Shown here piece by piece: positions 1-62,858 of a stretch of 64,000 nucleotides of DNA. Under the pieces are notes generated by a model that was not told the DNA's origin, made no database searches, and worked only from the letters and a program-made list of their open reading frames with translations. Made by a program: the position numbers and the translations under genes. This DNA comes from Macrostomum lignano (Eukaryota), in contig NIVC01002610.1 of NCBI GenBank assembly GCA_002269645.1, positions 48,167 through 112,166 of the forward strand. The letters are read 5' to 3'. Every line of letters begins with the position of its first letter. The first letter of the stretch is position 1.

Positions 1-1158
1 GTACGTCTAAAAACTACGCCTAAATCGGACAATACGCCCTTGAGGTTGGAAGAAGGCAGAATGCCTGTACTGGGCACTGGGCAGCACGCTCTTGGGGAAG
101 AGAGAGAGAGAGAGACAACACGCCTCTATTGAACAGCACTGTTGTACCTTGGGAGAAAGAGGCAAAATCTTCCCAAGTAAGTGATAATGACAAATATGCT
201 ATTTTTAGAACAAAAATATCAGACACTCGGATCGAGGCAAGTATTAGGCAAGAGCCCAGGAGCAAGAAGTTGGTCTTTCACTTGTGTTTTTCGTCGGTAT
301 ATTTAATAAGAAAATGAAGATGGCGGTTTCTTTAAAACAAACTACAGTATTTATACGTGTCTTTTAAATACAATAGGTGCAAAATATCAGTTTTTATCAG
401 TGCGCTAATAAAATATGGTTAGAAAAATTATTTCATTTTTTCAAGTTTCAAATTTCAAATTTTTTCAAGGAGATAGAAAATAATGCTAACCACCTATATA
501 ATCGCCTAATCACCTAGTAACCATAGTAATCACCAGAGATCCATAGCCACTCTAAGGACCTCCATGACAAACATGTACTTTTAAATTTCACCGACGCTTA
601 GCCGACGTATAATGACGTTATCTGTCGATGTAACGTAGAGTGCATATTTTATACTCTCGGATTGTATACAGTCTAGTCGGATTGCTGTACCGGTATAATG
701 AAATTGGGGATGTTGCCTCGCAAAGTAGCGGCCTAACTAATTCAGAACAAATATCACGTATGATCATAGCTATTGGTTTTACTCGTACCGCATTTCACAC
801 TCGCACTCGTAAAATATAGTTTCACATTTATACGTACAGAAACACCGCTTTTAAGGCTTTGAACTTTCCTTAACAAGGTCCACCAAACTTTTGTGGTTTT
901 TAATCCGATTCTTCTTATTTTTCTTCCTAGATGTCTGGCTCTCTGACCCTCTTGGTAATCTCCAAATTTGACAAGAGCAAATCTAATAATTTGTTATTAG
1001 AAATGAGAGCATTTCTCTAAGCACTACGATCGTAGCATAGAACTCAATTATAAGTACTCGTAATCGACCAGTTCCTGAAAAATCTCAGCACATGAGACTG
1101 TCTAAGTGCTTATAATTAATCCGTGCTAAGTACTTTGAGCTTAATTCGAAATTGCAGA

Positions 1159-4100
1159 ATGGGCAATACTGGAAGCAAACTGAGCAACAATACTGATGAG
1201 CATTGGAGCGTAGCTGCAAAATACAAAGTCGTTGGATGGAGCGCTGGCGATGGCATCATTCATGTGGGCCCTTGGGAATCAACACATTATGACTATAAGG
1301 GTTTTCCTGTTAACATCTATTTTAAACACAAGACGCATAGTTTGTCAGATACGGTTAGTGACTCAGATATGAAATCATGGTGCTACGGTTTCACAAACAT
1401 GGAATGGAAACTGCATTCACCATCAGAAGGCGTCATCCATCTGGAATATAATGGAGGATATGTTGCAAACTACAAATACGAAACCAGATCGATGTTCGCC
1501 GCGAGAATGCGCAGAGAAAAAGAGCAGAGAATGCAAGGGGCGCTGGAGCAGCTGAAGCAGGGCGACAGGGAGCAGGCACTTTTTGATCAAAATAGGGCGG
1601 AGCAGCAGAAGGCTAAACAAAGTGCGATGCAAACTGAAAACAGACAGAAGTGGGAAATTTTGAATGCTGAGCGACACAGAGCTTTGGTGAACTTCAACCA
1701 TAAAACCAATGATTTCAGCAGAAGATGCGAGGCGACGAGGCAAGAGAGATTGGCCAAATACGAGGCGAGTAAAAAGCAAACCGAAACAGATCGAGCAGAA
1801 CACTTTGCCAGATTGCAGAAGCAAGCAAGAGACAGAACAGAATGCGAACAGCTATCTTTGGCTGATGAACAGGAGCAGGCAAATGCTATTCGCAAACAGA
1901 GACTTGAAGATTTTCAGCGTCAAAAAGTGAGAATCGCTTCAGAAACTAGCGAAAAAATTAGCAGTCTTTACAAGGAAGCTCAGGAAACCAGAGCTCGTTT
2001 GAGAGCTCAGTTTGAAGAGAGAAAAAGTACTTTTCAGGAACAGATGGAGCAAAAGAAAGCGCAGATGCAGCAGCAAAGCTCGGAGATGCAGGAGAGGCTG
2101 CAGTTGCAGCACAGGCAGTTGGAAATTGGCAAAGAAGAACTTTACCGCGAGTTGGTTGACAGGGAGGCTGAAATTGCCCGAAAAATAGAAGAGCAGCGGC
2201 GGCATCGAGCGGAGAAGCAACGGGAGTCTGAGAACCTGAAGAAAACAGAGCAGTTCAAGCGACAAATATTGATAGAGCTGGAGAGAGAGAGAGCCAAAGC
2301 TATGCGCAGACAATTTAAGAGTGTTAGCTACTCTATTCAGCACGTCCGTGGGAAGAGCGCCCAAGGCTATTCTAATCCTGAAGTAAGCGAAGCATCCGAA
2401 GTGATGCTCAGAGACCAGTTTGAAGAAAATGTTGAAGGTGCTTTGATGAAAGTTCTAGCCAGTCTGTCCAATGCTATCGAGGATGATTCCAATCAGGAAC
2501 TGTCAGTAGCAGCTAATGTCAAAACAATTTCTGCAAAGGACGCTTTAGATTTATTTAACCGTGTCTGGAAATCAGAAGGTCATCCGTTCGGAAATGATCC
2601 AACATCTAGCCAGTTGTCTCTTCTACAACTATTGGATGAAAAATTCGCTCAACAGTGTTTAGATGCGGCTAATAAAGTCTTCCGAGAGATCTGCTTTCCA
2701 AATTTAGAACTCGACATAGTCAGCTATGGTCTGCTGGTTTTTGTCCTGCACAGCGAAAAATCCAACGATATCAAGCACGAACAAGACTTCAGTGCTCTCC
2801 GTCAGCAACTCAGCGACACAAGAATTGCACTGGCGCATATGAGAAAGCTCACTAGTGAAACAGCGCACAATGAACCCAGTCCTGTCACTGAAAGGCTGCT
2901 CCAGCTGCTAGTTGTGGCTGAAGATGTTATTCGACTTTGGCCGATTCAACAAGACCCTGCTGCTGGTTTAAAGAGGCTCAGAGTCGTACTGGCAACGATG
3001 CTGAGGCATGCTGGTGTGTCGCAGTATTTGGATGAAAAATCCAACACTGAATGTGTCGTAGAGCTCATAACATCAATGCAGCATTGGGACCCTGTTAGCA
3101 TGCTCAAGCTGATGGAATTTATACATACGAGTAGCACCGAGCCCGATCAAGTGAGAGAATTCGTGAAGATGATGGTGTTGAGCCGCGGCGACCCCAGATC
3201 TCTTTCGAGTCCTCGCGAGGCGATTACGGAAACTTATATTGCGAGCCTAAAAAAAGCTCAAGCATCACAGAAAACACTTGACCAGCTTCTCGATGAGCTG
3301 AAGAAGACAGGGCAGTTCGACGAGGGTCAACTTTCAGAACTTGCTGACGTAGTAAGAAAAGTTTTCACATATTTTGATTCGTCTGGGCTCGATAAAGCAT
3401 TGCAGAAACTGAAAATATGGGAACGTGGTAAGGAATCGCCACTGCACAAAATTCTGATTGATCTCTGTAAGGCAGTGCTGAAATGCAAGGGATATCTCCC
3501 AAGACATACACAAGTATTCAGTACTGCGGCCCTCCTAAACGCTTTTAAAAACAAAGCAAGTGGGCAAGTATTACAGATCCTGACTGGTGAAGGAAAATCC
3601 TGCATTGTTGCAATGTCTGCTGTAGGATTGGTGCGTCTTGGACAGAAATCTGTTGATGTCGTGGCTCCGTCAGAAGTTTTGGCTGCGAGAGACTGTAAGG
3701 AATGGAAAGATTTCTATAAAATATGCCATGTTTCAGTTGACTGCAACATTGAGCATGAAGATCCCAAAAAGTGCTATGAATCGTGCATAGTGTATGGCAC
3801 AGTCTCTTCTTTCGCGGGCGACACATTGCGGCATGAGTTCCAGTTCAAAGACATCCGCGGCTCACGAGGCTTTGATTCAATAATCGTGGATGAAGTTGAC
3901 TCTCTGCTGCTGGACCAAGGTGTGCAGCTGACGTATCTGGCTCAGGACGCAGGTGACATGAAAATGCTGGATCCAATTTTCGCTACTATCTTTAGAGCCA
4001 CTCTGGGCTGCCACGTTCTCAACACAGCGCACGGAGGTGAGATGGTGGCAGAGCAACAAATGACTTTTCTCTACCTCATAAAAGAGTTCTTCTCGTATGA

Positions 4101-7100
4101 TGAAGAGTTCAGCACTTTGGTCGAGCAACTTGATCTCAAGCAGTTAATTAGTTCAGAGGAGAAACAGAGCTTCTTGGCTCAAAATGCCGAACCAGTCGAT
4201 TTGTCAAACTTTGATATTAAAAGGACGATTCAGGTTCTTGAAGTTTCTGGAGAATTTTTGCAAAATTTTCCATCGTATACAATTTATACATTTAGAAATG
4301 CTGAAATCGAACCAGTGCGGCTTTGCCAAGATAGCTCATTTGATTTTTTAGTCCAAGATGGTGGAGTCTGCAATTTGCTTTTTGAAAATATCGATGACTT
4401 CAAAACGCGAAAGAAGGCCGATATCTTGTCGAGAATAGACTACAGTACAACAATACTGGACCCTAAAGACGACGCCAAAAAGAAACAGAATGAAGAGGCC
4501 CAGCTGCCCATTCCATCGCATTTAAAGCAGTTCATAGATGACATGCTGGATGTCTGGATCAACAGTGCCCTCACTGCAGGAGCTCTGCAACCCGGTAGAG
4601 ACTACCTGCTTCAGGGTGGAGACGCTGTTCCAGTAGACTACAAGCACACAGGAGTGGTGCAGGAGAACATGAGATGGAGCGATGGGCTGCAGCAGTTTCT
4701 GCAGTTAAAACACAGTCTGCAAATGCGGCCTCTAGGATTGGAAACAAACTTCCTGTCAAACTTGGCCTTCTTCCGTCGATATGGCAAATCTGTGTTCGGT
4801 GTATCTGGAACTCTCGGAGAAGAGCATGAGAAAAATTTCATGCGGGAAACTTACAAAGTGCAACTGAACTACATTCCTCCGTACAGGGAGCGCCGGCTTG
4901 TGGAGAACCCGGGCATTGTGACAGAAACCAAGTCAGAGTGCATCACGAAAATTTGCCAGCTAGTTACACAGGAGAGAAATCGGCCCAGCTTGATCGTGTG
5001 CGAGGATATCAACAGTGCCGACCTCATTTTCGAAGAGGTAACTCGCCGTTGTCACGGAGTTAAGACTAAAAAGTACGTCAAGAATGAGGACACAAAAGAT
5101 GAACTTCAGGTGGGTCCCGGTGATGTTATTGTGGCCACGAATCTGGCAGGCAGGGGCACGGATGTGAAAGTGAGTGACGACGCGGAGACAGCGGGAGGTC
5201 TGCACGTTCTCGTCACATTCCTGCCTCTGAATCAGCGAGTTGAGGAGCAAGTGTTCGGCCGCAGTGGTCGCAAGGGCCAGCGGGGTTCAGCGACTTTGCT
5301 GCTAAGCAGAGAGGGCCTCAGTGCCTGCTTTTCAGACTGTGACTCTGTCGAAGAAATGAAGCAGGTGAGACGAGAGGCCAGCTTGCAGGAACTGAAGAAT
5401 CATGAGGAGTTCGCGCTGCCGGAAGTTGAGTTCAAGGAGAATCTTTTCAAGTGTATCAGTCATTTGCTATCGGAGTATTATCATCAGATAAAGAAACCTC
5501 CCAGCTCTGGTACAGAGCTAGAAAAGCGTTGGTCAGAGACGGACCTAAAATTAAAAATGGATTATTTAAAAGAGATTTGGGGCATGCATCTCAAAAAGAC
5601 ACTCTGTCACATTACTGATTTCAGTATAGAGAGAACAGCTCAGTGCATTGGAGAAGTTGAGAAAATGTTCCAGGAAGCAAAATCTAATGTCGAATCCGAG
5701 TGTTCATTGAGTCCTTTTCAAGCACTGAAGTTCGCAGAGAAAAGTGTAAGGCACGAAGATTTCGAGCGGGCCATTGATCTTTACACAAAAGCTATAAATA
5801 TGAACAGCTCATGGTCGTCTATCGCGTACTACAACAGAGCATACGCAAAAATAATGAAAGGCAACTGTGATATCAGAGAAGTGATGGACGACTTGAAAGA
5901 CGCAAAAGCTCGGATTGCAGAAACTTGGCTGGCCCATGCCACGTGGACGCAGCTGTACTCTGGCGCAAGAATCCAGCAGGAAAACGCAAGCGATAATGAC
6001 TGTGAGGAGGCTAAGAAGAAAACACCCAAAGACCAAGCGAATAAACAAGTTAAGGAAGAAGCCAGCCAAGATGTTCGAAGTGAAGCTGCAAACCCTCAGT
6101 TCCGTCAGTGCGTGGCTCGAATAAGGATAATCAGCAATTATAAAACCCAAATAGAAAAATGCCTGGAAAATCTGGAAGAGCACAGAAGAGCTGGTGATAA
6201 AATCATTGCTGTCAGCACTTGCATTAAGGAGATTGAGAAGGAGCCAGACAGCATTACACTTGACGAGCTCAAGTCACTGTACCATCTGGGTCATGTAAGA
6301 TTTTTTGATGTACAAAAGAAGCCTTCATATACATTAGCGATTGCTGTGGCGATTTTCGGTGCTTTTGAGATTGCACTTGGCAGCGCGCTGTGCTACTGTG
6401 GTCAGGTGAATGTCGGAAATTATTTTATCAATGAAGGCATTAATGATATAATGGCAGGTGTGATGGGAATGATTCAGGGTGATTTTAATTTAAAAGCCTG
6501 GCTAAAAAATAAAGCCATCAATATTGGTGTCAGCCTACTGACTTTTGGATTTAGAAAAGTTGCTAACTATCTTAAGTCTTCGGGAAAATTCGCATCTGTT
6601 GCGCAAAAAGTTAACTCAGCTGGGAGTACATTTTACACTAAAGCCGCATCAGTACTGAACAAAGTGATTGGACAAAACGCTGTTAAGTTTATTAAGACCA
6701 TAATGAGCAATCCAATTGTACAGAAAGTGACCGATTACGCGATAAGTGTAGCTCAAAGGAAACTGCTCGATCAGTTAATTGAAAAGTTAAAGCAGGACGT
6801 CCAAAGCGACGTTAAAGAGAAGTGCGCCTCTGAGGCTGAAAGCGGAAAACTTCATGACATTGTTCTCCGACTGACTGCTCCTCTCTGCTTAGTAAAGGAC
6901 CAGGAGACGAGTAAAATCGATTTATATGATTTTTCCACTCTAACTGATTCTCAAACCAAAATCATTTTACAGGCTCTTACCGCTATAGCACACGAAGCAA
7001 CAGATGAATTAATGTCTGATGTAAAAAATACGGCCAAAGTAATTGAAGCAATTAATTCACGATTGACTGTACTAAAAGACGAGTTCTCGCAACTCTTCAA

Positions 7101-7218
7101 AGGTATTCTGTCTTTTGTAAGACTGGCATCAGTAGCAGTGGATTCGGCAGCAATAGCAGAGCATGCAAAAACATTAAACAGCCTGGTAGGCAATACCAGG
7201 TGGACAAATTATTGCTGA
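1159..7218 (+). CDS. Large SecA-family (DEAD-like) ATPase protein: N-terminal beta-rich domain and coiled coil, SecA NBD1/NBD2, TPR, hydrophobic C-terminal segment; probably continues into the repeat ORF
   Basis: Uninterrupted ORF, first ATG at 1159 (MGNTGSK). SecA motifs appear in the correct order: QILTGEGKS (3574-3600, Walker A), VVAPSEVLAARD, IVYGTVSSFAGDTLR, IIVDEVDSLLLD (DEVD 3889-3900), RWSDGLQQ (4672), FFRRYGKSVFGVSGT, ATNLAGRGTD (5134), GGLHVLVT..QVFGRSGRKGQRG (5248). TPR-like FERAIDLYTKAINMNSSWSSIAYYNRA at about 5761-5845. Not labelled secA because the size and extra domains differ from the canonical translocase. Confidence 0.92.
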   Translation: MGNTGSKLSNNTDEHWSVAAKYKVVGWSAGDGIIHVGPWESTHYDYKGFPVNIYFKHKTHSLSDTVSDSDMKSWCYGFTNMEWKLHSPSEGVIHLEYNGGYVANYKYETRSMFAARMRREKEQRMQGALEQLKQGDREQALFDQNRAEQQKAKQSAMQTENRQKWEILNAERHRALVNFNHKTNDFSRRCEATRQERLAKYEASKKQTETDRAEHFARLQKQARDRTECEQLSLADEQEQANAIRKQRLEDFQRQKVRIASETSEKISSLYKEAQETRARLRAQFEERKSTFQEQMEQKKAQMQQQSSEMQERLQLQHRQLEIGKEELYRELVDREAEIARKIEEQRRHRAEKQRESENLKKTEQFKRQILIELERERAKAMRRQFKSVSYSIQHVRGKSAQGYSNPEVSEASEVMLRDQFEENVEGALMKVLASLSNAIEDDSNQELSVAANVKTISAKDALDLFNRVWKSEGHPFGNDPTSSQLSLLQLLDEKFAQQCLDAANKVFREICFPNLELDIVSYGLLVFVLHSEKSNDIKHEQDFSALRQQLSDTRIALAHMRKLTSETAHNEPSPVTERLLQLLVVAEDVIRLWPIQQDPAAGLKRLRVVLATMLRHAGVSQYLDEKSNTECVVELITSMQHWDPVSMLKLMEFIHTSSTEPDQVREFVKMMVLSRGDPRSLSSPREAITETYIASLKKAQASQKTLDQLLDELKKTGQFDEGQLSELADVVRKVFTYFDSSGLDKALQKLKIWERGKESPLHKILIDLCKAVLKCKGYLPRHTQVFSTAALLNAFKNKASGQVLQILTGEGKSCIVAMSAVGLVRLGQKSVDVVAPSEVLAARDCKEWKDFYKICHVSVDCNIEHEDPKKCYESCIVYGTVSSFAGDTLRHEFQFKDIRGSRGFDSIIVDEVDSLLLDQGVQLTYLAQDAGDMKMLDPIFATIFRATLGCHVLNTAHGGEMVAEQQMTFLYLIKEFFSYDEEFSTLVEQLDLKQLISSEEKQSFLAQNAEPVDLSNFDIKRTIQVLEVSGEFLQNFPSYTIYTFRNAEIEPVRLCQDSSFDFLVQDGGVCNLLFENIDDFKTRKKADILSRIDYSTTILDPKDDAKKKQNEEAQLPIPSHLKQFIDDMLDVWINSALTAGALQPGRDYLLQGGDAVPVDYKHTGVVQENMRWSDGLQQFLQLKHSLQMRPLGLETNFLSNLAFFRRYGKSVFGVSGTLGEEHEKNFMRETYKVQLNYIPPYRERRLVENPGIVTETKSECITKICQLVTQERNRPSLIVCEDINSADLIFEEVTRRCHGVKTKKYVKNEDTKDELQVGPGDVIVATNLAGRGTDVKVSDDAETAGGLHVLVTFLPLNQRVEEQVFGRSGRKGQRGSATLLLSREGLSACFSDCDSVEEMKQVRREASLQELKNHEEFALPEVEFKENLFKCISHLLSEYYHQIKKPPSSGTELEKRWSETDLKLKMDYLKEIWGMHLKKTLCHITDFSIERTAQCIGEVEKMFQEAKSNVESECSLSPFQALKFAEKSVRHEDFERAIDLYTKAINMNSSWSSIAYYNRAYAKIMKGNCDIREVMDDLKDAKARIAETWLAHATWTQLYSGARIQQENASDNDCEEAKKKTPKDQANKQVKEEASQDVRSEAANPQFRQCVARIRIISNYKTQIEKCLENLEEHRRAGDKIIAVSTCIKEIEKEPDSITLDELKSLYHLGHVRFFDVQKKPSYTLAIAVAIFGAFEIALGSALCYCGQVNVGNYFINEGINDIMAGVMGMIQGDFNLKAWLKNKAINIGVSLLTFGFRKVANYLKSSGKFASVAQKVNSAGSTFYTKAASVLNKVIGQNAVKFIKTIMSNPIVQKVTDYAISVAQRKLLDQLIEKLKQDVQSDVKEKCASEAESGKLHDIVLRLTAPLCLVKDQETSKIDLYDFSTLTDSQTKIILQALTAIAHEATDELMSDVKNTAKVIEAINSRLTVLKDEFSQLFKGILSFVRLASVAVDSAAIAEHAKTLNSLVGNTRWTNYC

Positions 7219-7247
7219 AGAGACAATGGAAAATAAAATTTGACCAG

Positions 7248-10200
7248 ACCATTGACATCCGAAGCGAAAAGCTGCAGAGAAAAGAATGCATCAAACCACT
7301 CTGTAAAGCTACTGGAAAAGAGCTGGAGCAGCGCATCATTGAATGCGTCATTGTAATACTGGAAGAGCACATCCGTAAAAACCTAGATGGCATTGTGGAA
7401 AACAGCATTGAACAAGCAAAAAAATTCATTGGAAAAACATTTAAAACCGCACATAAAGAAAATACAGCTAATAAAAAGATACCATCCATCAAAAATAAAA
7501 ATATTGAAGAATCCGAAAAAGCCGGAATAAAGAAATTCATGAAGAAGACTAAAGTCACTGCTACAGACTCCGGTGTGGAGCTAGCTAATGCAGACACAAA
7601 ACTAGCGGTCAGGACTGGCGACTCTGGAGTGAGTGTGGCCGTTCAGCACAAAGACATCGCTCTCGGCGTGTCTCACGGATCGGACGGTTCTACAGAAGTG
7701 GCCGCGAGCAAGGGCGACAGCAAACTAGCGGTCAAGGCTGGCGACTCTGGAGTGAGTGTGGCCGTTCAGCACAAAGACATCGCTCTCGGCGTGTCTCACG
7801 GATCGGACGGTTCTACAGAAGTGGCCGCGAGCAAGGGCGACAGCAAACTAGCGGTCAAGGCTGGCGACTCTGGAGTGAGTGTGGCCGCTCAGCACAAAGA
7901 CATCGCTCTCGGCGTGTCTCACGGATCGGACAGTTCTACAGAAGTGGCCGCGAGCAAGGGCGACAGCAAACTAGCGGTCAAGGCTGGCGACTCTGGAGTG
8001 AGTGTGGCCGCTCAGCACAAAGACATCGCTCTCGGCGTGTCTCACGGATCGGACGGTTCTACAGAAGTGGCCGCGAGCAAGGGCGACAGCAAACTAGCGG
8101 TCAAGGCTGGCGACTCTGGAGTGAGTGTGGCCGCTCAGCACAAAGACATCGCTCTCGGCGTGTCTCACGGATCGGACGGTTCTACAGAAGTGGCCGCGAG
8201 CAAAAGCGACAGCAAACTAGCGGTCAAGGCTGGCGACTCTGGAGTGAGTGTGGCCGCTCAGCACAAAGACATCGCTCTCGGCGTGTCTCACGGATCGGAC
8301 AGTTCTACAGAAGTGGCCGCGAGCAAGGGCGACAGCAAACTAGCGGTCAAGGCTGGCGACTCTGGAGTGAGTGTGGCCGCTCAGCACAAAGACATCGCTC
8401 TCGGCGTGTCTCACGGATCGGACAGTTCTACAGAAGTGGCCGCGAGCAAGGGCGACAGCAAACTAGCGGTCAAGGCTGGCGACTCTGGAGTGAGTGTGGC
8501 CGCTCAGCACAAAGACATCGCTCTCGGCGTGTCTCACGGATCGGACAGTTCTACAGAAGTGGCCGCGAGCAAGGGCGACAGCAAACTAGCGGTCAAGGCT
8601 GGCGACTCTGGAGTGAGTGTGGCCGCTCAGCACAAAGACATCGCTCTCGGCGTGTCTCACGGATCGGACAGTTCTACAGAAGTGGCCGCGAGCAAGGGCG
8701 ACAGCAAACTAGCGGTCAAGGCTGGCGACTCTGGAGTGAGTGTGGCCGCTCAGCACAAAGACATCGCTCTCGGTGTGTCTCACGGATCGGACAGTTCTAC
8801 AGAAGTGGCCGCGAGCAAGGGCGACAGCAAACTAGCGGTCAAGGCTGGCGACTCTGGAGTGAGTGTGGCCGCTCAGCACAAAGACATGGCTCTCGGCGTG
8901 TCTCACGGATCGGACAGTTCTACAGAAGTGGCCGCGAGCAAGGGCGACAGCAAACTAGCGGTCAAGGCTGGCGACTCTGGAGTGAGTGTGGCCGCTCAGC
9001 ACAAAGACATCGCTCTCGCGTGTCTCACGGATCGGACAGTTCTACAGAAGTGGCCGCGAGCAAGGGCGACAGCAAACTAGCGGTCAAGGCTGGCGACTCT
9101 GGAGTGAGTGTGGCCGCTCAGCACAAAGACATCGCTCTCGGCGTGTCTCACGGATCGGACAGTTCTACAGAAGTGGCCGCGAGCAAGGGCGACAGCAAAC
9201 TAGCGGTCAAGGCTGGCGACTCTGGAGTGAGTGTGGCCGCTCAGCACAAAGACATCGCTCTCGGCGTGTCTCACGGATCGGACGGTTCTACAGAAGTGGC
9301 CGCGAGCAAGGGCGACAGCAAACTAGCGGTCAAGGCTGGCGACTCTGGAGTGAGTGTGGCCGCTCAGCACAAAGACATCGCTCTCGGCGTGTCTCACGGA
9401 TCGGACGGTTCTACAGAAGTGGCCGCGAGCAAGCGACAGCAAACTAGCGGTCAAGGCTGGCGACTCTGGAGTGAGTGTGGCCGCTCAGCACAAAGACATC
9501 GCTCTCGGCGTGTCTCACGGATCGGACGGTTCTACAGAAGTGGCCGCGAGCAAGGGCGACAGCAAACTAGCGGTCAAGGCTGGCGACTCTGGAGTGAGTG
9601 TGGCCGCTCAGCACAAAGACATCGCTCTCGGCGTGTCTCACGGATCGGACAGTTCTACAGAAGTGGCCGCGAGCAAGGGCGACAGCAAACTAGCGGTCAA
9701 GGCTGGCGACTCTGGAGTGAGTGTGGCCGCTCAGCACAAAGACATCGCTCTCGGCGTGTCTCACGGATCGGACAGTTCTACAGAAGTGGCCGCGAGCAAG
9801 GGCGACAGCAAACTAGCGGTCAAGGCTGGCGACTCTGGAGTGAGTGTGGCCGCTCAGCACAAAGACATCGCTCTCGGTGTGTCTCACGGATCGGACAGTT
9901 CTACAGAAGTGGCCGCGAGCAAGGGCGACAGCAAACTAGCGGTCAAGGCTGGCGACTCTGGAGTGAGTGTGGCCGCTCAGCACAAAGACATGGCTCTCGG
10001 CGTGTCTCACGGATCGGACAGTTCTACAGAAGTGGCCGCGAGCAAGGGCGACAGCAAACTAGCGGTCAAGGCTGGCGACTCTGGAGTGAGTGTGGCCGCT
10101 CAGCACAAAGACATCGCTCTCGGCGTGTCTCACGGATCGGACAGTTCTACAGAAGTGGCCGCGAGCAAGGGCGACAGCAAACTAGCGGTCAAGGCTGGCG

Positions 10201-13200
10201 ACTCTGGAGTGAGTGTGGCCGCTCAGCACAAAGACATCGCTCTCGGCGTGTCTCACGGATCGGACAGTTCTACAGAAGTGGCCGCGAGCAAGGGCGACAG
10301 CAAACTAGCGGTCAAGGCTGGCGACTCTGGAGTGAGTGTGGCCGCTCAGCACAAAGACATCGCTCTCGGCGTGTCTCACGGATCGGACGGTTCTACAGAA
10401 GTGGCCGCGAGCAAGGGCGACAGCAAACTAGCGGTCAAGGCTGGCGACTCTGGAGTGAGTGTGGCCGCTCAGCACAAAGACATCGCTCTCGGCGTGTCTC
10501 ACGGATCGGACGGTTCTACAGAAGTGGCCGCGAGCAAGCGACAGCAAACTAGCGGTCAAGGCTGGCGACTCTGGAGTGAGTGTGGCCGCTCAGCACAAAG
10601 ACATCGCTCTCGGCGTGTCTCACGGATCGGACGGTTCTACAGAAGTGGCCGCGAGCAAGCGACAGCAAACTAGCGGTCAAGGCTGGCGACTCTGGAGTGA
10701 GTGTGGCCGCTCAGCACAAAGACATCGCTCTCGGCGTGTCTCACGGATCGGACAGTTCTACAGAAGTGGCCGCGAGCAAGGGCGACAGCAAACTAGCGGT
10801 CAAGGCTGGCGACTCTGGAGTGAGTGTGGCCGCTCAGCACAAAGACATGGCTCTCGGCGTGTCTCACGGATCGGACGGTTCTACAGAAGTGGCCGCGAGC
10901 AAGGGCGACAGCAAACTAGCGGTCAAGGCTGGCGACTCTGGAGTGAGTGTGGCCGCTCAGCACAAAGACATCGCTCTCGGCGTGTCTCACGGATCGGACA
11001 GTTCTACAGAAGTGGCCGCGAGCAAGCGACAGCAAACTAGCGGTCAAGGCTGGCGACTCTGGAGTGAGTGTGGCCGCTCAGCACAAAGACATGGCTCTCG
11101 GCGTGTCTCACGGATCGGACAGTTCTACAGAAGTGGCCGCGAGCAAGGGCGACAGCAAACTAGCGGTCAAGGCTGGCGACTCTGGAGTGAGTGTGGCCGC
11201 TCAGCACAAAGACATCGCTCTCGGCGTGTCTCACGGATCGGACGGTTCTACAGAAGTGGCCGCGAGCAAGCGACAGCAAACTAGCGGTCAAGGCTGGCGA
11301 CTCTGGAGTGAGTGTGGCCGCTCAGCACAAAGACATCGCTCTCGGCGTGTCTCACGGATCGGACAGTTCTACAGAAGTGGCCGCGAGCAAGGGCGACAGC
11401 AAACTAGCGGTCAAGGCTGGCGACTCTGGAGTGAGTGTGGCCGCTCAGCACAAAGACATGGCTCTCGGCGTGTCTCACGGATCGGACGGTTCTACAGAAG
11501 TGGCCGCGAGCAAGGGCGACAGCAAACTAGCGGTCAAGGCTGGCGACTCTGGAGTGAGTGTGGCCGCTCAGCACAAAGACATCGCTCTCGGCGTGTCTCA
11601 CGGATCGGACAGTTCTACAGAAGTGGCCGCGAGCAAGGGCGACAGCAAACTAGCGGTCAAGGCTGGCGACTCTGGAGTGAGTGTGGCCGCTCAGCACAAA
11701 GACATCGCTCTCGGCGTGTCTCACGGATCGGACAGTTCTACAGAAGTGGCCGCGAGCAAGGGCGACAGCAAACTAGCGGTCAAGGCTGGCGACTCTGGAG
11801 TGAGTGTGGCCGCTCAGCACAAAGACATGGCTCTCGGCGTGTCTCACGGATCGGACAGTTCTACAGAAGTGGCCGCGAGCAAGGGCGACAGCAAACTAGC
11901 GGTCAAGGCTGGCGACTCTGGAGTGAGTGTGGCCGCTCAGCACAAAGACATCGCTCTCGGCGTGTCTCACGGATCGGACGGTTCTACAGAAGTGGCCGCG
12001 AGCAAGGGCGACAGCAAACTAGCGGTCAAGGCTGGCGACTCTGGAGTGAGTGTGGCCGCTCAGCACAAAGACATCGCTCTCGGCGTGTCTCACGGATCGG
12101 ACGGTTCTACAGAAGTGGCCGCGAGCAAAAGCGACAGCAAACTAGCGGTCAAGGCTGGCGACTCTGGAGTGAGTGTGGCCGCTCAGCACAAAGACATCGC
12201 TCTCGGCGTGTCTCACGGATCGGACGGTTCTACAGAAGTGGCCGCGAGCAAGCGACAGCAAACTAGCGGTCAAGGCTGGCGACTCTGGAGTGAGTGTGGC
12301 CGCTCAGCACAAAGACATCGCTCTCGGCGTGTCTCACGGATCGGACAGTTCTACAGAAGTGGCCGCGAGCAAGGGCGACAGCAAACTAGCGGTCAAGGCT
12401 GGCGACTCTGGAGTGAGTGTGGCCGCTCAGCACAAAGACATGGCTCTCGGCGTGTCTCACGGATCGGACGGTTCTACAGAAGTGGCCGCGAGCAAGGGCG
12501 ACAGCAAACTAGCGGTCAAGGCTGGCGACTCTGGAGTGAGTGTGGCCGCTCAGCACAAAGACATCGCTCTCGGCGTGTCTCACGGATCGGACAGTTCTAC
12601 AGAAGTGGCCGCGAGCAAAAGCGACAGCAAACTAGCGGTCAAGGCTGGCGACTCTGGAGTGAGTGTGGCCGCTCAGCACAAAGACATGGCTCTCGGCGTG
12701 TCTCACGGATCGGACAGTTCTACAGAAGTGGCCGCGAGCAAGGGCGACAGCAAACTAGCGGTCAAGGCTGGCGACTCTGGAGTGAGTGTGGCCGCTCAGC
12801 ACAAAGACATCGCTCTCGGCGTGTCTCACGGATCGGACGGTTCTACAGAAGTGGCCGCGAGCAAGCGACAGCAAACTAGCGGTCAAGGCTGGCGACTCTG
12901 GAGTGAGTGTGGCCGCTCAGCACAAAGACATCGCTCTCGGCGTGTCTCACGGATCGGACAGTTCTACAGAAGTGGCCGCGAGCAAGGGCGACAGCAAACT
13001 AGCGGTCAAGGCTGGCGACTCTGGAGTGAGTGTGGCCGCTCAGCACAAAGACATGGCTCTCGGCGTGTCTCACGGATCGGACGGTTCTACAGAAGTGGCC
13101 GCGAGCAAGGGCGACAGCAAACTAGCGGTCAAGGCTGGCGACTCTGGAGTGAGTGTGGCCGCTCAGCACAAAGACATCGCTCTCGGCGTGTCTCACGGAT

Positions 13201-14627
13201 CGGACAGTTCTACAGAAGTGGCCGCGAGCAAAAGCGACAGCAAACTAGCGGTCAAGGCTGGCGACTCTGGAGTGAGTGTGGCCGCTCAGCACAAAGACAT
13301 GGCTCTCGGCGTGTCTCACGGATCGGACAGTTCTACAGAAGTGGCCGCGAGCAAGGGCGACAGCAAACTAGCGGTCAAGGCTGGCGACTCTAGAGTGAGT
13401 GTGGCCGCTCAGCACAAAGACATCGCTCTCGGCGTGTCTCACGGATCGGATGGTTCTACAGAAGTGGCCGCGAGCAAAAGCGACAGCAAACTAGCGGTCA
13501 AGGCTGGCGACTCTGGAGTGAGTGTGGCCGCTCAGCACAAAGACATCGCTCTCGGCGTGTCTCACGGATCGGACAGTTCTACAGAAGTGGCCGCGAGCAA
13601 GGGCGACAGCAAACTAGCGGTCAAGGCTGGCGACTCTGGAGTGAGTGTGGCCGCTCAGCACAAAGACATCGCTCTCGGCGTGTCTCACGGATCGGACAGT
13701 TCTACAGAAGTGGCCGCGAGCAAGGGCGACAGCAAACTAGCGGTCAAGGCTGGCGACTCTGGAGTGAGTGTGGCCGCTCAGCACAAAGACATCGCTCTCG
13801 GCGTGTCTCACGGATCGGACAGTTCTACAGAAGTGGCCGCGAGCAAGGGCGACAGCAAACTAGCGGTCAAGGCTGGCGACTCTGGAGTGAGTGTGGCCGC
13901 TCAGCACAAAGACATGGCTCTCGGCGTGTCTCATGGATCGGACAGTTCTACAGAAGTGGCCGCGAGCAAGGGCGACAGCAAACTAGCGGTCAAGGCTGGC
14001 GACTCTAGAGTGAGTGTGGCCGCTCAGCACAAAGACATCGCTCTCGGCGTGTCTCACGGATCGGATGGTTCTACAGAAGTGGCCGCGAGCAAAAGCGACA
14101 GCAAACTAGCGGTCAAGGCTGGCGACTCTGGAGTGAGTGTGGCCGCTCAGCACAAAGACATCGCTCTCGGCGTGTCTCACGGATCGGACAGTTCTACAGA
14201 AGTGGCCGCGAGCAAGGGCGACAGCAAACTAGCGGTCAAGGCTGGCGACTCTGGAGTGAGTGTGGCCGCTCAGCACAAAGACATCGCTCTCGGCGTGTCT
14301 CATGGATCGGACAGTTCTACAGAAGTGGCCGCGAGCAAGGGCGACAGCAAACTAGCGGTCAAGGCTGGCGACTCTGGAGTGAGTGTGGCCGCTCAGCACA
14401 AAGACATCGCTCTCGGCGTGTCTCACGGATCGGACAGTTCTACAGAAGTGGCCGCGAGCAAGGGCGACAGCAAACTAGCGGTCAAGGCTGGCGACTCTGG
14501 AGTGAGTGTGGCCGCTCAGCACAAAGACATCGCTCTCGGCGTGTCTCATGGATCGGACAGTTCTACAGAAGTGGCCGCGAGCAAGGGCGACAGCAAACTA
14601 GCGGTCAAGGCTGGTGAATCTCTATAA
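7248..14627 (+). CDS. Probable C-terminal continuation of the SecA-like protein: about 120 aa unique linker plus about 57 x 41-aa repeats; interrupted by 8 small deletions as assembled
   Basis: The frame open from 7200 runs from unique sequence directly into the repeat frame, with degenerate first units (TATDSGVELANADTKLAVRTGDSG). The array ends in a unique in-frame KLAVKAGESL-stop (TAA 14625-14627). Deletions: 1 nt at about 9018 and 2 nt at about 9431, 10535, 10657, 11024, 11268, 12250 and 12863. Confidence 0.62.
7599..14614 (+). repeat. 123-bp tandem repeat, about 57 near-identical copies, unit KGDSKLAVKAGDSGVSVAAQHKDIALGVSHGSDSSTEVAAS
   Basis: Directly visible period of 123 bp, with seven 121-bp variant units and one 122-bp unit. 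Confidence 0.98.
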
Positions 14628-15445: not shown

Positions 15446-15740
15446 AAATACTGTTTTGTATTATTTCTGGTTTAACATTGTCAATTTTTAAAATGGCTTT
15501 AAAATCATGCAAAAACTCATGGACAAAATATTGAATTTAGGGTTTTGGTTAGGGTTAGGGTTAGGGTTAGAAGTTTTACAGGAGATTTTTTAAGATTTCA
15601 AGGCTACATGTAGCTTATTAAAAAAACGTGTATTGCATTTATTTGGCTCCCCAACGGGGGGGCGTAGATTGCTAGTAAATATTGTTTTGTATTATTTTCT
15701 GGTTTAACATTGTTAATTTTTAAAATGGCTTTAAAATCAT
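15446..15740 (+). repeat. About 63-bp direct repeats (15446-15508, 15677-15740) flanking a segment with (TTAGGG)3 and a Helitron-like 3' end
   Basis: Two near-identical copies of AAATA(C/T)TGTTTTGTATTATTT..TTTAAAATCAT. TTAGGG x3 at about 15549-15570. GC hairpin 15646-15663 followed 8 nt later by CTAG|T (15672-15676). Confidence 0.55.
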
Positions 15741-16202
15741 TTGATTTCAAACACACTACTACATGTATATGTTACTGTACCTTCGTAGCTTTTTTGTCGA
15801 ACGTATATCGAACGCACCAAAAGCCGAATTACAATCTTTATTTTATTTTAAGAGGAGTATATAGCTCGTATGAATTAAATAAATTATCGGAAAAAGTCTG
15901 AGATTTGATGTGAACAGCAAATTTACTGATGATTATGTACATAGGCTACACTCGGCGACTTAAAATAAAGGCTCATTCCCATTGCAATCAAATTCAACCA
16001 ACCAAATACTACGATCAATGTACAAATGAACCAAATTTGATGTACAAGTCGCGTTATCAAACGAAATTGGACCAGATTAGATGGTGTTTTGAATGAACGA
16101 AGTTAGGGCTGCGATGGACACTCCTGTGTGAGTTTGGCCTGCTGTGCATATGGTTGCCGTACGTATCCGAGCGCTTGCATGTGTGCCTGGTCGGGGGGTG
16201 TC

Positions 16203-16219
16203 GTCTGTCTGTCTGTCTC

Positions 16220-16259
<40 letters not shown>

Positions 16260-16285
16260 CCTGCCTGTCTGTCTTTGTCTTTCTA

Positions 16286-16320
<35 letters not shown>

Positions 16321-16640
16321 CTCTGTCTGTCTGTCTGTCTGCCTGTCTGTCTGTCTTTGTCTTTCTATCTGTCTGTCTGTCTGTCCGTCTGTCTGTCTGT
16401 CTGTCTATCTGTCTGTCTTGTGTCTGTCTGTCTGGGTGTCTGTCTGTCTGCCTGTCTGTCTGTCTGTCTGTCCTAGTGTCTGTCTGTCTGTCTATCTGTC
16501 TGTCTTACTGTCTGTCTGTCTGGGTGTCTGTCTGTCTGCCTGTCTGTCTGTCTGTCTGTCCGTCCGTCTGTCTGTCTGTCTATCTGTCTGTCTTAGTGTC
16601 TGTCTGTCTGTCTGTCTGTCTGTCTTAGTGTCTGTCTGAG

Positions 16641-16671
<31 letters not shown>

Positions 16672-16672
16672 G

Positions 16673-16729
<57 letters not shown>

Positions 16730-16790
16730 GACTGTCTGTCTGTCCGTCTGTCTGTCTGTCTGTCTGTCCTAGCGTCTGTCTGTCTGTCTG
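16203..16790. repeat. Imperfect (GTCT)n microsatellite
   Basis: Direct inspection; the VCLS/TDRQ ORFs here are translation artefacts. Confidence 0.97.
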
Positions 16791-60600: not shown

Positions 60601-62858
60601 AATAGTAAACACAGCCCAGCCTAGCTCAAGGCTAGTAATTTGTTGGGCATTTATTGGGACATTGCAGCCAGGCCTATTTTTTGAACAGCATTTGTTGGGT
60701 CGCACTTATTGGGACAATACTGATTCTAATCGCGACTACTTCTGAGTTCTGACTTTTCAAAACAGACCCAGCATTAGTTGAACACGTTCTATTAAAGGGT
60801 TCCTTTATAGCCTATTAATGATTACTAAAGCAAGCCTATCTTAATTGATTTCTTTTCCTCGCAGATTCTGAAGTCAGCCACGCCAGCGACATGCCTAAGA
60901 GACAAGAATGCGCTTTAACGATCAGCAGCGAGCATTCTGATCTCGCCGCTGCATCCGTCATTTGGTTCACTTGCTGCTCACAAGCCGCAGCAGCAGCAGC
61001 CGCTATCCGTGCAGGCAGTCAGTCTATTTGTGAATTTTCTGGTGGATCTGAAGAAAACCCGTCCGGCACAGGATTAAAGAGAAAGAGACGATCTGTTTTG
61101 GGTGAGTATTATCTGCTGTAGAAGTATTGTACACCAGAGTACTTGTGTTACTTGGTAGAGCACAATTCAAAAGCAATGCAACAATCTCAGTGGCATTGTT
61201 GGGACACAAGCTACAAACGCATTGAATAGTAAACACAGCCCAGCCTAGCTCAAGGCTAGTAATTTGTTGGGCATTTATTGGGACATTGCAGCCAGGCCTA
61301 TTTTTTGAACAGCATTTGTTGGGTCGCACTTATTGGGACAATACTGATTCTAATCGCGACTACTTCTGAGTTCTGACTTTTCAAAACAGACCCAGCATTA
61401 GTTGAACACGTTCTATTAAAGGGTTCCTTTATAGCCTATTAATGATTACTAAAGGCAAGCCTATCTTAATTGATTTCTTTTCCTCGCAGATTCTGAAGTC
61501 AGCCACGCCAGCGACATGCCTAAGAGACAAGAATGCGCTTTAACGATCAGCAGCGAGCATTCTGATCTCGCCGCTGCATCCGTCATTTGGTTCACTTGCT
61601 GCTCACAAGCCGCAGCAGCAGCAGCCGCTATCCGTGCAGGCAGTCAGTCTCTTTGTGAATTTTCTGGTGGATCTGAAGAAAACCCGTCCGGCACAGGATT
61701 AAAGAGAAAGAGACGATCTGTTTTGGGTGAGTATTATCTGCTGTAGAAGTATTGTACACCAGAGTACTTGTGTTACTTGGTAGAGCACAATTCAAAAGCA
61801 ATGCAACAATCTCAGTGGCATTGTTGGGACACAAGCTACAAACGCATTGAATAGTAAACACAGCCCAGCCTAGCTCAAGGCTAGTAATTTGTTGGGCATT
61901 TATTGGGACATTGCAGCCAGGCCTATTTTTTGAACAGCATTTGTTGGGTCGCACTTATTGGGACAATACTGATTCTAATCGCGACTACTTCTGAGTTCTG
62001 ACTTTTCAAAACAGACCCAGCATTAGTTGAACACGTTCTATTAAAGGGTTCCTTTATAGCCTATTAATGATTACTAAAGCAAGCCTATCTTAATTGATTT
62101 CTTTTCCTCGCAGATTCTGAAGTCAGCCACGCCAGCGACATGCCTAAGAGACAAGAATGCGCTTTAACGATCAGCAGCGAGCATTCTGATCTCGCCGCTG
62201 CATCCGTCATTTGGTTCACTTGCTGCTCACAGCAGCAGCAGCAGCAGCCGCTATCCGTGCAGGCAGTCAGTCTATTTGTGAATTTTCTGGTGGATCTGAA
62301 GAAAACCCGTCCGGCACAGGATTAAAGAGAAAGAGACGATCTGTTTTGGGTGAGTATTATCTGCTGTAGAAGTATTGTACACCAGAGTACTTGTGTTACT
62401 TGGTAGAGCACAATTCAAAAGCAATGCAACAATCTCAGTGGCATTGTTGGGACACAAGCTACAAACGCATTGAATAGTAAACACAGCCCAGCCTAGCTCA
62501 AGGCTAGTAATTTGTTGGGCATTTATTGGGACATTGCAGCCAGGCCTATTTTTTGAACAGCATTTGTTGGGTCGCACTTATTGGGACAATACTGATTCTA
62601 ATCGCGACTACTTCTGAGTTCTGACTTTTCAAAACAGACCCAGCATTAGTTGAACACGTTCTATTAAAGGGTTCCTTTATAGCCTATTAATGATTACTAA
62701 AGCAAGCCTATCTTAATTGATTTCTTTTCCTCGCAGATTCTGAAGTCAGCAACGCCAGCGACATGCCTAAGAGACAAGAATGCGCTTTAACGATCAGCAG
62801 CGAGCATTCTGATCTCGCCGCTGCATCCGTCATTTGGTTCACTTGCTGCTCACAAGCC

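What the first reader, a model, noticed from the sequence alone, without database searches (positions are those of the whole stretch)
1159..14627. Giant animal SecA-ATPase protein with lipid anchor, TPR, membrane hairpin and a 57-copy repeat tail: candidate sensor/effector (NLR-like) system
Seen: a complete ordered SecA motif set inside a 2019-codon intronless ORF, in a genome whose other genes have long repeat-filled introns. It is preceded by MGNTGSK and a coiled coil and followed by a TPR, hydrophobic segments and a homogenised 41-aa repeat array (about 4470 aa if joined). Established: canonical SecA is the bacterial/plastid protein-translocation motor and animals have no SecYEG-SecA pathway. 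Fungal NLRs such as HET-E pair an NTPase with concertedly evolving repeat arrays that set recognition specificity. Inference: a repurposed, possibly horizontally acquired SecA motor acting as a membrane-anchored sensor or toxin-like effector with a rapidly reshuffled repeat module. I recall automated SecA-domain annotations in scattered eukaryotes, so the family may be known, but I know of no functional description.
Basis: partly seen in the sequence, partly recalled or inferred. Interest (0 to 1): 0.86.

Follow-up and report, generated by a model that had tools for sequence, protein, structure and literature searches.

The report
Giant flatworm SecA-like membrane ATPase gene
This is a real gene of the flatworm Macrostomum lignano for a giant membrane-anchored protein built around a SecA-type ATPase motor and probably ending in 57 near-identical 41-residue repeats; it belongs to an animal and endosymbiont gene family reported in 2013 whose function is still untested.

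Summary
Window 1159-7218 is an uninterrupted 2019-codon ORF in Macrostomum lignano (assembly Mlig_3_7). It has all SecA ATPase motifs, an MGNTGSK myristoylation-type start, a charged helical stretch, one TPR-like motif and a strongly hydrophobic helical segment.

A 123-bp x 57 array (7599-14621) follows. It is reached only after a 1-nt frame change near 7200 and contains eight frameshifting deletions. The assembly is unpolishable PacBio CLR here, so error and real decay cannot be told apart.

The 126 stop-free codons between ORF and array (3 of 20,000 shuffles) argue that coding continues past 7218. So do the in-frame entry into the array and the stop right after it.

The family is not new. 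Duplouy et al. 2013 described giant, mostly intronless eukaryotic secA-domain genes exchanged with Wolbachia and Amoebophilus. I find hundreds of members in fishes, amphibians, coelacanth, a hemichordate and mosquitoes. They share the post-SecA hydrophobic module, many start with MG, and their C-terminal tails vary (AHH nuclease in Aedes, weak OTU-like signal in vertebrates).

The NLR analogy and recent bacterial acquisition are not supported. Best reading: a new member of this uncharacterised family with an orphan, predicted all-beta repeat tail. The mechanism is inferred only.

The parts
1152..1158 (+). 'ttgcag' acceptor-like sequence directly before the start codon; possible trans-splice or 3' splice site
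   Evidence: Sequence read. M. lignano mRNAs are often trans-spliced (PMC5730564). Inference only, not tested.
1159..7218 (+). ORF1: 2019 codons without interruption, encoding the SecA-like giant protein (stop 7216-7218)
   Evidence: This exact protein was also called on NIVC01002610.1.
1159..1179 (+). MGNTGSK, an N-myristoylation-type start
   Evidence: Pattern match. 43 of 152 long family members start with MG and 32 fit the pattern. Polyodon starts MGNTVTIK.
1159..1503 (+). N-terminal domain of about 115 aa, of the vertebrate 'MGxxxT.xNxT...W' type
   Evidence: No Pfam match.
1504..2358 (+). Charged, proline-free stretch (aa 116-400), coiled-coil-like
   Evidence: 52% E/R/K/Q and 0 Pro. Relatives have E/R/K-rich repeats at the same place. 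No coiled-coil predictor was run.
3268..4827 (+). SecA DEAD-like NBD1 (Walker A 3586-3606, DEVD 3889-3900) with a large insert (aa 929-1159) where SecA has its preprotein cross-linking domain
   Evidence: Pfam SecA_DEAD 1e-23; SecA_PP_bind matched only in part, E=0.02. Motifs. AF2 shows a beta-rich insert.
4834..5328 (+). NBD2 (P-loop_SecA / Helicase_C; GRGTD and GRSGR motifs)
5347..5490 (+). 48-residue helix directly after NBD2, in the position of SecA's helical scaffold
   Evidence: AF2 H708-755 of the model, pLDDT 80 overall. Foldseek aligns 870-950 columns to full-length SecA.
5725..5907 (+). Single TPR-like motif
   Evidence: Pfam TPR_BSK1_C E=2e-4, below cut-off. Family profile vs consensus TPR structures E=1.4e-9. 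Aedes homolog has TPR_1/TPR_8.
6331..6543 (+). Conserved hydrophobic module: three predicted helices (aa 1725-1746, 1750-1773, 1778-1795), the first strongly hydrophobic, with the family motif G[IV][SN]D
   Evidence: Hydropathy 2.13, AF2, conservation across the family.
7056..7218 (+). Overlap zone where frame 1 (ORF1) and frame 3 (linker and array) are both open. The frame change (assembly indel, real frameshift or micro-intron, e.g. 7186-7220) must lie here.
7221..7598 (+). Lys-rich linker: 126 codons open in frame 3 only, running in frame into the array
   Evidence: 3 of 20,000 dinucleotide shuffles are stop-free; the other frames have 6 and 14 stops. Weak collinear match to the family C-terminal profile.
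7599..14621 (+). Tandem array of 57 units of 123 bp (41 aa: KLAVKAGDSGVSVAAQHKDIALGVSHGSDSSTEVAASKGDS), 60% GC, 15 unit types with higher-order blocks
8952..12872 (+). Zone holding the eight frameshifting deletions: 1 bp (GG>G) in the unit starting at 8952; 2 bp (AAGGGCGAC>AAGCGAC) in the units starting at 9320, 10425, 10546, 10913, 11157, 12139 and 12752
14625..14627 (+). TAA stop in the array's coding frame, 10 codons into the last partial unit, followed by AT-rich sequence

Best explanation
Shown: the locus is a protein-coding gene of the flatworm Macrostomum lignano. It belongs to the eukaryotic family of giant secA-domain proteins.

The protein has a constant part made of these pieces, in order:
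- a Gly-2 start fitting the N-myristoylation pattern, and a small N-terminal domain;
- a long charged helical stretch and a helical region;
- a SecA-type two-lobed ATPase with every catalytic motif intact and a SecA-like overall fold;
- one TPR-like motif;
- a conserved module of three helices, the first hydrophobic enough to sit in a membrane.

Inferred: the protein sits on the cytosolic face of a membrane, held by the lipid anchor and the hydrophobic helices. Like SecA, it would use ATP to grip and push a polypeptide at that membrane.

The part after the hydrophobic module differs between lineages. It is an AHH nuclease in Aedes, an OTU-like region (weak signal) in fishes and amphibians, and here about 57 copies of an orphan 41-residue unit predicted to form amphipathic beta-strands. 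That layout, a constant delivery or anchoring part with a swappable C-terminal part, is the layout of effector and toxin proteins in biological conflicts. Patchy distribution, paralogue clusters and exchange with endosymbionts point the same way. I therefore favour a defence or effector role, with the tail as the working end or cargo.

The array most likely belongs to the coding sequence. The frame change at about 7200 and the eight deletions in the array are either residual PacBio CLR errors or recent decay of the tail.
For: - Gene and organism.
- SecA motor: Pfam, NCBIfam and PDB matches and intact motifs. The AF2 model (pLDDT 80, pTM 0.76) has full-length SecA structures as top matches (E=3e-26; TM 0.62 normalised to 5eul_A).
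- Family size: collinear 28% identity over aa 631-1846 with the Polyodon protein. The post-SecA profile finds 1058 cluster representatives, 621 at E<1e-10. A second profile finds 470 proteins at E<1e-20.
- Family range: fishes, amphibians, coelacanth, Ptychodera and mosquitoes, plus an Amoebophilus ankyrin giant protein.
- MG starts are enriched in the family.
- Variable tails: AHH in Aedes at 25 bits, above the 22.3 cut-off; weak OTU signals; a different repeat tail in P0059.
- Tail is coding: linker open in 3 of 20,000 shuffles; unit length 3 x 41; in-frame entry and a terminal stop; weak collinear profile match across the frame change.
- Error model: Canu 1.4 CLR assembly polished only with short reads (PMC5730564). 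All deletions lie in G runs.
- Literature: PMC3639933, PMC5062602, PMC3482391, PMC8195603.
Against: - No expression, localisation or activity data were available.
- No protein in 5.8 billion sequences resembles the linker or the repeat unit, and Pfam and PADLOC find nothing.
- The 2-bp deletion recurs seven times and sits inside recurring higher-order blocks (ICJ, ICJLG). That looks more like a real, propagated variant than random error. If so, the reading frame ends after about 12-24 units.
- Two of the three frames of the 60%-GC unit are open, so openness of the array alone is weak evidence.
- Differences between units show no purifying selection.
- The AF2 model of the repeats is only moderately confident (pLDDT 66) and has no structural match at E<1e-3.
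- The flatworm tail carries no recognisable effector domain.
- The conflict or effector role rests on architecture and distribution, not on any test.
Confidence: 0.55

Rival explanations
1. The gene ends at or shortly after 7218, and the 123-bp array is a non-coding satellite or a decayed former coding tail that merely abuts it.
For: - Stop at 7216-7218 in the ORF1 frame.
- Eight frameshifting deletions, seven of them identical and embedded in recurring unit blocks.
- GC jumps from 37-45% to 60%.
- The window is full of other tandem repeats.
- No homolog of the unit exists anywhere.
- The gene caller stopped at 7218.
Against: - 126 further stop-free codons in exactly the frame that enters the array's protein-like frame (p about 1.5e-4).
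- The period is a multiple of three, unlike nearly all other repeats in the window.
- A stop codon comes right after the last unit.
- The deletions sum to a multiple of three.
- Homologs all continue 350-900 residues beyond the hydrophobic module.
Confidence: 0.25
2. One reading: an NLR-like sensor in which the NTPase acts as a switch and the concertedly evolving repeats set recognition specificity, as in the fungal protein HET-E.
For: The gross layout, an NTPase followed by highly homogenised repeats, resembles HET-E. The family shows the patchy distribution and paralogue expansion typical of immune genes.
Against: - The NTPase is an SF2/SecA motor, not a STAND ATPase.
- The repeats vary at 11 sites with two states each and have no hypervariable patch.
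- Relatives carry enzymes, not repeats, at the same position.
- The repeats are predicted as beta-strand meanders with no match to WD40, LRR, TPR or ANK.
Confidence: 0.07
3. A recent horizontal acquisition from bacteria, or a chimeric or contaminant join in the assembly.
For: - SecA is typically bacterial.
- The ORF is intronless.
- Homologs occur in Amoebophilus, in Wolbachia phage WO, and on a compact prokaryote-like metagenome contig.
Against: - Flanks are typical flatworm DNA, with microsatellites, TTAGGG repeats and an MTP18 exon.
- The closest relatives are animal proteins, and the N-terminal MG motif and domain type are shared with vertebrates.
- In a rough NJ tree the protein sits with the animal group, apart from canonical SecA.
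- The published ML tree infers eukaryote-to-bacterium transfer for this clade, and notes that these eukaryotic genes are generally intronless.
Confidence: 0.05
4. A canonical SecA translocase working with a SecY-type channel, for example in an organelle.
For: Full catalytic motif set and SecA-like fold, including a scaffold-like helix.
Against: - NCBIfam scores of 100-144 bits against cut-offs of 725-1493.
- No SecA_SW or SEC-C domains.
- About 800 residues precede the motor and more than 600 follow it.
- A myristoylation-type rather than an organelle-targeting N-terminus.
- Animals lack SecYEG (established knowledge).
Confidence: 0.03

Closest known systems
Eukaryotic giant secA-domain proteins and their Wolbachia copies wBol1_1091/wBol1_1092 (Duplouy et al. 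2013, BMC Genomics 14:20; listed among phage WO 'eukaryotic association module' domains by Bordenstein & Bordenstein 2016)
   Same: A SecA ATPase core in a protein thousands of residues long. Mostly intronless. Patchy in eukaryotes. A clade separate from canonical SecA. Function unknown. The Aedes member of that clade is a direct homolog here.
   Different: Those papers did not report flatworm or vertebrate members, the conserved hydrophobic module, the MG start or the tail domains. The flatworm tail is a 57-copy orphan repeat found in no other member.
Vertebrate and hemichordate 'protein translocase subunit SecA-like' / 'uncharacterized protein LOC...' genes (e.g. Polyodon XP_041093940.1, Lissotriton LOC144819160, Latimeria LOC135359053, Ptychodera)
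   Same: Collinear over about 1200 residues at 27-33% identity. Same N-terminal type, TPR and hydrophobic module.
   Different: Their tails carry a conserved region with weak OTU-like signal, and in some a further C-terminal domain. The flatworm has the repeat array instead.
Bacterial SecA (e.g. B. subtilis 1tf5, and 5eul in complex with SecY)
   Same: DEAD-type motor with all motifs. Part of the cross-linking domain stem. A long helix after NBD2. Best structural match.
   Different: No wing/scaffold or SEC-C Pfam match. Far below equivalog cut-offs. Large N- and C-terminal additions. No SecYEG partner in animals.
SecA-like ATPase modules in endosymbiont effectors and giant secreted toxins (Amoebophilus effectors, Zhang et al. 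2012; actinobacterial giant toxins, Kaur et al. 2021)
   Same: A SecA-like ATPase embedded in a very large multidomain protein with variable effector domains. An Amoebophilus ankyrin giant protein shares the SecA, TPR and hydrophobic module.
   Different: Those are bacterial proteins acting on a host or a rival. This one is host-encoded, with a eukaryotic lipid-anchor motif.
Fungal NLR HET-E
   Same: An NTPase plus highly homogenised tandem repeats.
   Different: Different NTPase class, different repeat type, and no hypervariable positions.

Membership tests
Canonical SecA preprotein translocase | Two-lobed DEAD-type motor (NBD1, NBD2) with Walker A, DEVD, motif III, V and VI | tested here: met
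   Pfam SecA_DEAD 1e-23 and P-loop_SecA. PDB SecA 1e-32. Motifs at aa 810, 911, 1216, 1331 and 1367.
Canonical SecA preprotein translocase | Complete preprotein cross-linking domain | tested here: inconclusive
   Only positions 61-109 of 110 of SecA_PP_bind match, at E=0.02. A beta-rich insert of about 230 residues occupies the site in the AF2 model.
Canonical SecA preprotein translocase | Helical scaffold and wing domains (SecA_SW) | tested here: inconclusive
   No PF07516 match. But there is a 48-residue helix after NBD2, and Foldseek aligns about 870-950 columns to full-length SecA.
Canonical SecA preprotein translocase | Score above the curated equivalog cut-off | tested here: not met
   TIGR00963 gives 127 bits against a cut-off of 800. 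The best model gives 144 against 862.
Canonical SecA preprotein translocase | C-terminal zinc-binding SEC-C motif | tested here: not met
   No PF02810 match.
Canonical SecA preprotein translocase | Works with SecYEG to export preproteins | not testable with these tools
   Needs biochemistry. Animals lack SecYEG (established knowledge).
Eukaryotic giant secA-domain protein family (Duplouy 2013 clade; animal 'SecA-like' genes) | Collinear homology beyond the ATPase to animal members | tested here: met
   aa 631-1846 align with Polyodon, E=2e-114. Profile hits.
Eukaryotic giant secA-domain protein family (Duplouy 2013 clade; animal 'SecA-like' genes) | Groups with eukaryotic members, apart from canonical SecA | tested here: met
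   NJ tree on 568 columns. It is rough and has no support values. It agrees with the ML tree of PMC3639933.
Eukaryotic giant secA-domain protein family (Duplouy 2013 clade; animal 'SecA-like' genes) | Very long, essentially intronless coding sequence | tested here: met
   6057-nt uninterrupted ORF. A possible micro-intron or indel only at about 7200.
Eukaryotic giant secA-domain protein family (Duplouy 2013 clade; animal 'SecA-like' genes) | Conserved TPR plus hydrophobic helical module after the motor | tested here: met
   Alignments A1-A3, hydropathy, AF2.
NLR / STAND sensors (HET-E-like) | STAND NTPase (NACHT or NB-ARC) | tested here: not met
   Only SecA and SF2 helicase families match.
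NLR / STAND sensors (HET-E-like) | Repeats with hypervariable, positively selected positions | tested here: not met
   11 variable sites with two states each, 4 synonymous and 7 non-synonymous. This is one haplotype only; population data were not available.
Polymorphic-toxin-like effectors | Constant N-terminal part with differing C-terminal toxin domains among homologs | tested here: inconclusive
   AHH nuclease in Aedes, above cut-off. OTU-like signals are below cut-off. Most tails are unassigned.
Polymorphic-toxin-like effectors | A recognisable toxin domain in this protein's own tail | tested here: not met
   No Pfam, PADLOC, protein-database or structural match for the linker or repeats.

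The most novel reading that the evidence does not exclude
The constant part (SecA-type motor plus hydrophobic helical module) is a self-contained translocation device encoded by animals. Anchored on the cytosolic face, it would thread the protein's own C-terminal tail into or across a membrane. That tail is the beta-repeat array here, and a nuclease or peptidase in relatives. This would be a eukaryotic counterpart of self-delivering bacterial toxins, and a SecA-driven export route independent of SecYEG.
Probability: 0.12. Interest if true: 0.85.

Novelty: new member of a known kind. Interest (0 to 1): 0.45.

Why it matters
SecA is textbook bacterial machinery, yet hundreds of animal genes keep its motor intact inside giant membrane-anchored proteins, and no functional study of them turned up in my literature searches. 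This flatworm copy is the only member I found named from a flatworm, and it sits in a species where transgenesis is established (PMC5730564) and, from my own knowledge, RNAi as well. Its tail is an unusually clean 57-unit repeat.

Comparing the family brought out features that the papers I read do not mention:
- a conserved hydrophobic module after the motor;
- a frequent myristoylation-type start;
- swappable C-terminal ends, including a toxin-type nuclease.

Together these turn 'uncharacterised SecA-like' into a testable idea of a membrane-bound, ATP-driven effector. If the idea is wrong, the locus is simply one more member of an annotated orphan family.

Tried and rejected
- The first full-length protein search returned only 15 hits, probably because words from the charged low-complexity region filled the candidate list (my inference). 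Searching again with profiles of the conserved region solved this.
- A search with the junction plus three repeats found nothing, so no transcript-derived protein could settle the join.
- I listed every GT-AG pair that would join the two frames. There are too many, including 35-nt and 62-nt candidates, to choose one without RNA data.
- I cut the C-terminal columns from alignment A3, but MAFFT had misplaced the fragment's end. I redid this by anchoring on the G[IV][SN]D motif.
- The AF2 model of eight repeats gave a moderate-confidence beta meander. Its Foldseek matches (VDAC, OspA, ApoB) are all above E=0.01 and I treat them as uninformative.
- PADLOC gave only a sub-threshold DpdF helicase hit.
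- Supplementary files of the genome paper, and a Macrostomum + SecA literature search, held nothing on this gene.
- Resemblance of the unit to 14-residue YadA-head or ice-nucleation repeats was a recollection only. Pfam did not support it.
- Substitution counts between units are too few, and too affected by homogenisation, to test selection.

Full report
**Origin of the window.** The exact 2019-residue product of window 1159-7218 is on record for contig NIVC01002610.1 of assembly GCA_002269645.1. Papers tie that accession to Macrostomum lignano Mlig_3_7. The assembly was made with Canu 1.4 from PacBio CLR reads and polished with Pilon using short reads (PMC5730564). The rest of the window is typical repeat-rich animal DNA. 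It holds dozens of micro- and minisatellites, a short TTAGGG run and an exon-like ORF matching MTP18 at 21292-21597.

**The observation.**
- ORF1 runs without interruption from ATG 1159 to the stop at 7216-7218. Stops lie just upstream and 'ttgcag' sits directly before the ATG.
- Pfam finds SecA_DEAD (E=1e-23), P-loop_SecA and Helicase_C.
- NCBIfam SecA models match at 100-144 bits, far below their cut-offs of 725-1493.
- PDB SecA chains match at E=1e-32.
- Walker A, DEVD, motif III, GRGTD and GRSGR are all intact.
- The start MGNTGSK fits the N-myristoylation pattern.
- aa 116-400 are 52% E/R/K/Q with no proline.
- A single TPR-like motif lies at aa 1523-1583.
- aa 1722-1750 are strongly hydrophobic.
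- Tandem Repeats Finder reports 57.2 copies of a 123-bp unit at 7599-14621 with 98% matches.

The description is therefore accurate.

**The join and the array.** ORF1 is in frame 1. The array's protein-like frame is frame 3, which is open from 7056.
- After ORF1's stop, frame 3 stays open for 126 codons up to the array, while the other frames have 6 and 14 stops. Only 3 of 20,000 dinucleotide shuffles do as well.
- This Lys-rich linker runs in frame into the unit KLAVKAGDSGVSVAAQHKDIALGVSHGSDSSTEVAASKGDS. A TAA follows 10 codons into the last partial unit.
- A profile of homologs' post-hairpin regions aligns collinearly: first to the end of ORF1 in frame 1 (profile positions 27-184), then weakly to the linker in frame 3 (positions 226-316).
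- The frame change could be a 1-nt assembly deletion near 'ccagg/tgg', a real frameshift, or a micro-intron such as 7186-7220. Sequence alone cannot decide.

Inside the array, 49 units are 123 bp, one is 122 bp (GG>G), and seven are 121 bp with the same change, AAGGGCGAC>AAGCGAC. The deletions sum to -15, so the first ORF (7200-9080) and the last (12786-14627) share a frame. All deletions are in G runs, and short-read polishing cannot work in such an array, which favours error. However, the 2-bp-deleted unit recurs inside higher-order blocks (ICJ, ICJLG), which favours a real, propagated variant. I leave this open at about even odds.

Differences between units are few: 11 sites, 4 synonymous and 7 not. 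The unit has no homolog in 5.8 billion proteins, nor in Pfam or PADLOC. AF2 predicts about four beta-strands per unit at moderate confidence (pLDDT 66). Nothing in the PDB matches below E=0.01.

**The family.** The first search was swamped, probably by the charged region, but it found Polyodon, Aedes and a metagenome protein with the same order of parts.
- The Polyodon protein aligns collinearly over aa 631-1846.
- A profile of the post-motor region alone found 1058 cluster representatives in 1.84 billion proteins, 621 at E<1e-10 and 180 at E<1e-30.
- A profile of motor plus post-motor region found 470 proteins at E<1e-20.
- Named members include teleosts, gar, sturgeon and paddlefish, bichirs, coelacanth, caecilians, salamanders (several loci on one chromosome), frogs, the hemichordate Ptychodera, culicine mosquitoes, and an Amoebophilus ankyrin giant protein.
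- Databases call them 'uncharacterized' or 'protein translocase subunit SecA-like'.
- Of 152 members of at least 1700 residues, 43 start with MG and 32 fit the myristoylation pattern. The flatworm N-terminus resembles the vertebrate 'MGxxxT.xNxT...W' type.

**Structure of the core.** An AF2 model of aa 690-1850 built with 45 family sequences reached pLDDT 80 and pTM 0.76.
- Its best PDB matches are full-length SecA structures (1tf5, E=3e-26; 5eul_A, TM 0.62 normalised to the target; 870-950 aligned columns). Other SF2 helicases come far behind.
- The model shows a beta-rich insert where SecA has its cross-linking domain.
- It shows a 48-residue helix right after NBD2, as in SecA's scaffold.
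- It shows three helices at aa 1725-1795.

**Tails of relatives.** The Aedes protein ends in an AHH nuclease of the HNH/EndoVII toxin type (25 bits, cut-off 22.3). Vertebrate tails give only weak OTU-like signals: Pfam E=0.003-0.02, and a viral OTU structure at E=0.023. One member has a different K/Q/T-rich repeat tail.

**Phylogeny.** A rough NJ tree puts the family apart from canonical SecA, the mosquito proteins with the Amoebophilus-like ones, and the flatworm protein at the base of the vertebrate and hemichordate group. There are no support values.

**Literature.**
- Duplouy et al. 2013 (PMC3639933) described a eukaryotic clade of very long, mostly intronless secA-domain genes in mosquitoes, ants, Daphnia, beetles and protists. 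They inferred transfers from eukaryotes into Wolbachia (wBol1_1091/1092) and Amoebophilus (Aasi_1610/1144).
- Bordenstein & Bordenstein 2016 list SecA among phage WO domains closer to invertebrates than to bacteria.
- Zhang et al. 2012 and Kaur et al. 2021 note SecA-like modules in Amoebophilus effectors and in giant actinobacterial toxins. In the latter they are predicted to aid secretion.
- I found no functional study of the animal genes.

**Interpretation.**
- Shown: a real flatworm gene; a member of this family; an intact SecA-type motor and fold; a conserved hydrophobic module; an MG start.
- Inferred: membrane anchoring on the cytosolic face; ATP-driven action on a polypeptide; a conflict or effector role suggested by variable tails, patchy distribution, paralogue clusters and traffic with endosymbionts.
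- Probable but unproven: the repeat array is the C-terminal tail.
- Not supported: the NLR analogy (no STAND domain, no hypervariable repeat positions) and a recent bacterial origin.
- Most novel reading still open: the motor and hydrophobic module move the protein's own tail into or across a membrane. I give this about 0.12.

**Verdict.** This is a new member of a known but functionally unexplored family, with a lineage-specific orphan repeat tail. Interest is moderate. The family deserves experiments, and this species can be manipulated, but the finding is not a new kind of system.

Noticed in passing
window 21292-21597 (+): Exon-like ORF matching Pfam MTP18 (mitochondrial fission process protein), E=1.5e-5. 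It is an ordinary animal gene fragment about 7 kb downstream of the array, which supports a genuine eukaryotic context.
   Followed up: partly
window 54760-62577 (-): Long satellite with a unit of roughly 600-650 bp. Each copy carries a nearly identical 101-108-aa ORF (MRPNKCCSKNRPGCNVPINAQQ...). Not reported by TRF because the period exceeds 500. No Pfam match for the ORF.
   Followed up: partly
window 15538-15572: Short interstitial run of the telomere-type repeat (TTAGGG)n in the AT-rich sequence downstream of the array.
   Followed up: no
window 34685-35209 (-): ORF with Ala-rich and poly-Gln tracts (17 consecutive Q) next to (AG)n and 15-bp repeats. Possibly an exon of a low-complexity protein. 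No Pfam match.
   Followed up: partly
window 16199-16790, 29150-31043, 48319-48525: Very long (TGTC)n/(ACAG)n microsatellites, up to 473 copies, which create long spurious ORFs on both strands. The Pfam SAM_5 hit in the 17-bp repeat at 41434-42294 has no passing stretch and looks spurious.
   Followed up: partly
P0278, not in the window: A partial family member deposited as a 'Candidatus Thiodiazotropha taylori' MAG protein groups with amphibian proteins in the NJ tree. It may be host or contaminant DNA binned into the symbiont MAG rather than a bacterial gene.
   Followed up: no
L002 1-11657 (JGI metagenome 3300048016): The 2676-aa family member P0004 lies on a compact contig with closely spaced genes, the next one overlapping it and carrying a DUF7945 domain. 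That is a prokaryote- or virus-like context for a protein with the same SecA plus hydrophobic module.
   Followed up: partly
Lissotriton helveticus LOC144819160, -164, -167, -181: Several full-length paralogues with neighbouring locus numbers on one 2.1-Gb chromosome record, suggesting tandem expansion of the family in newts.
   Followed up: no
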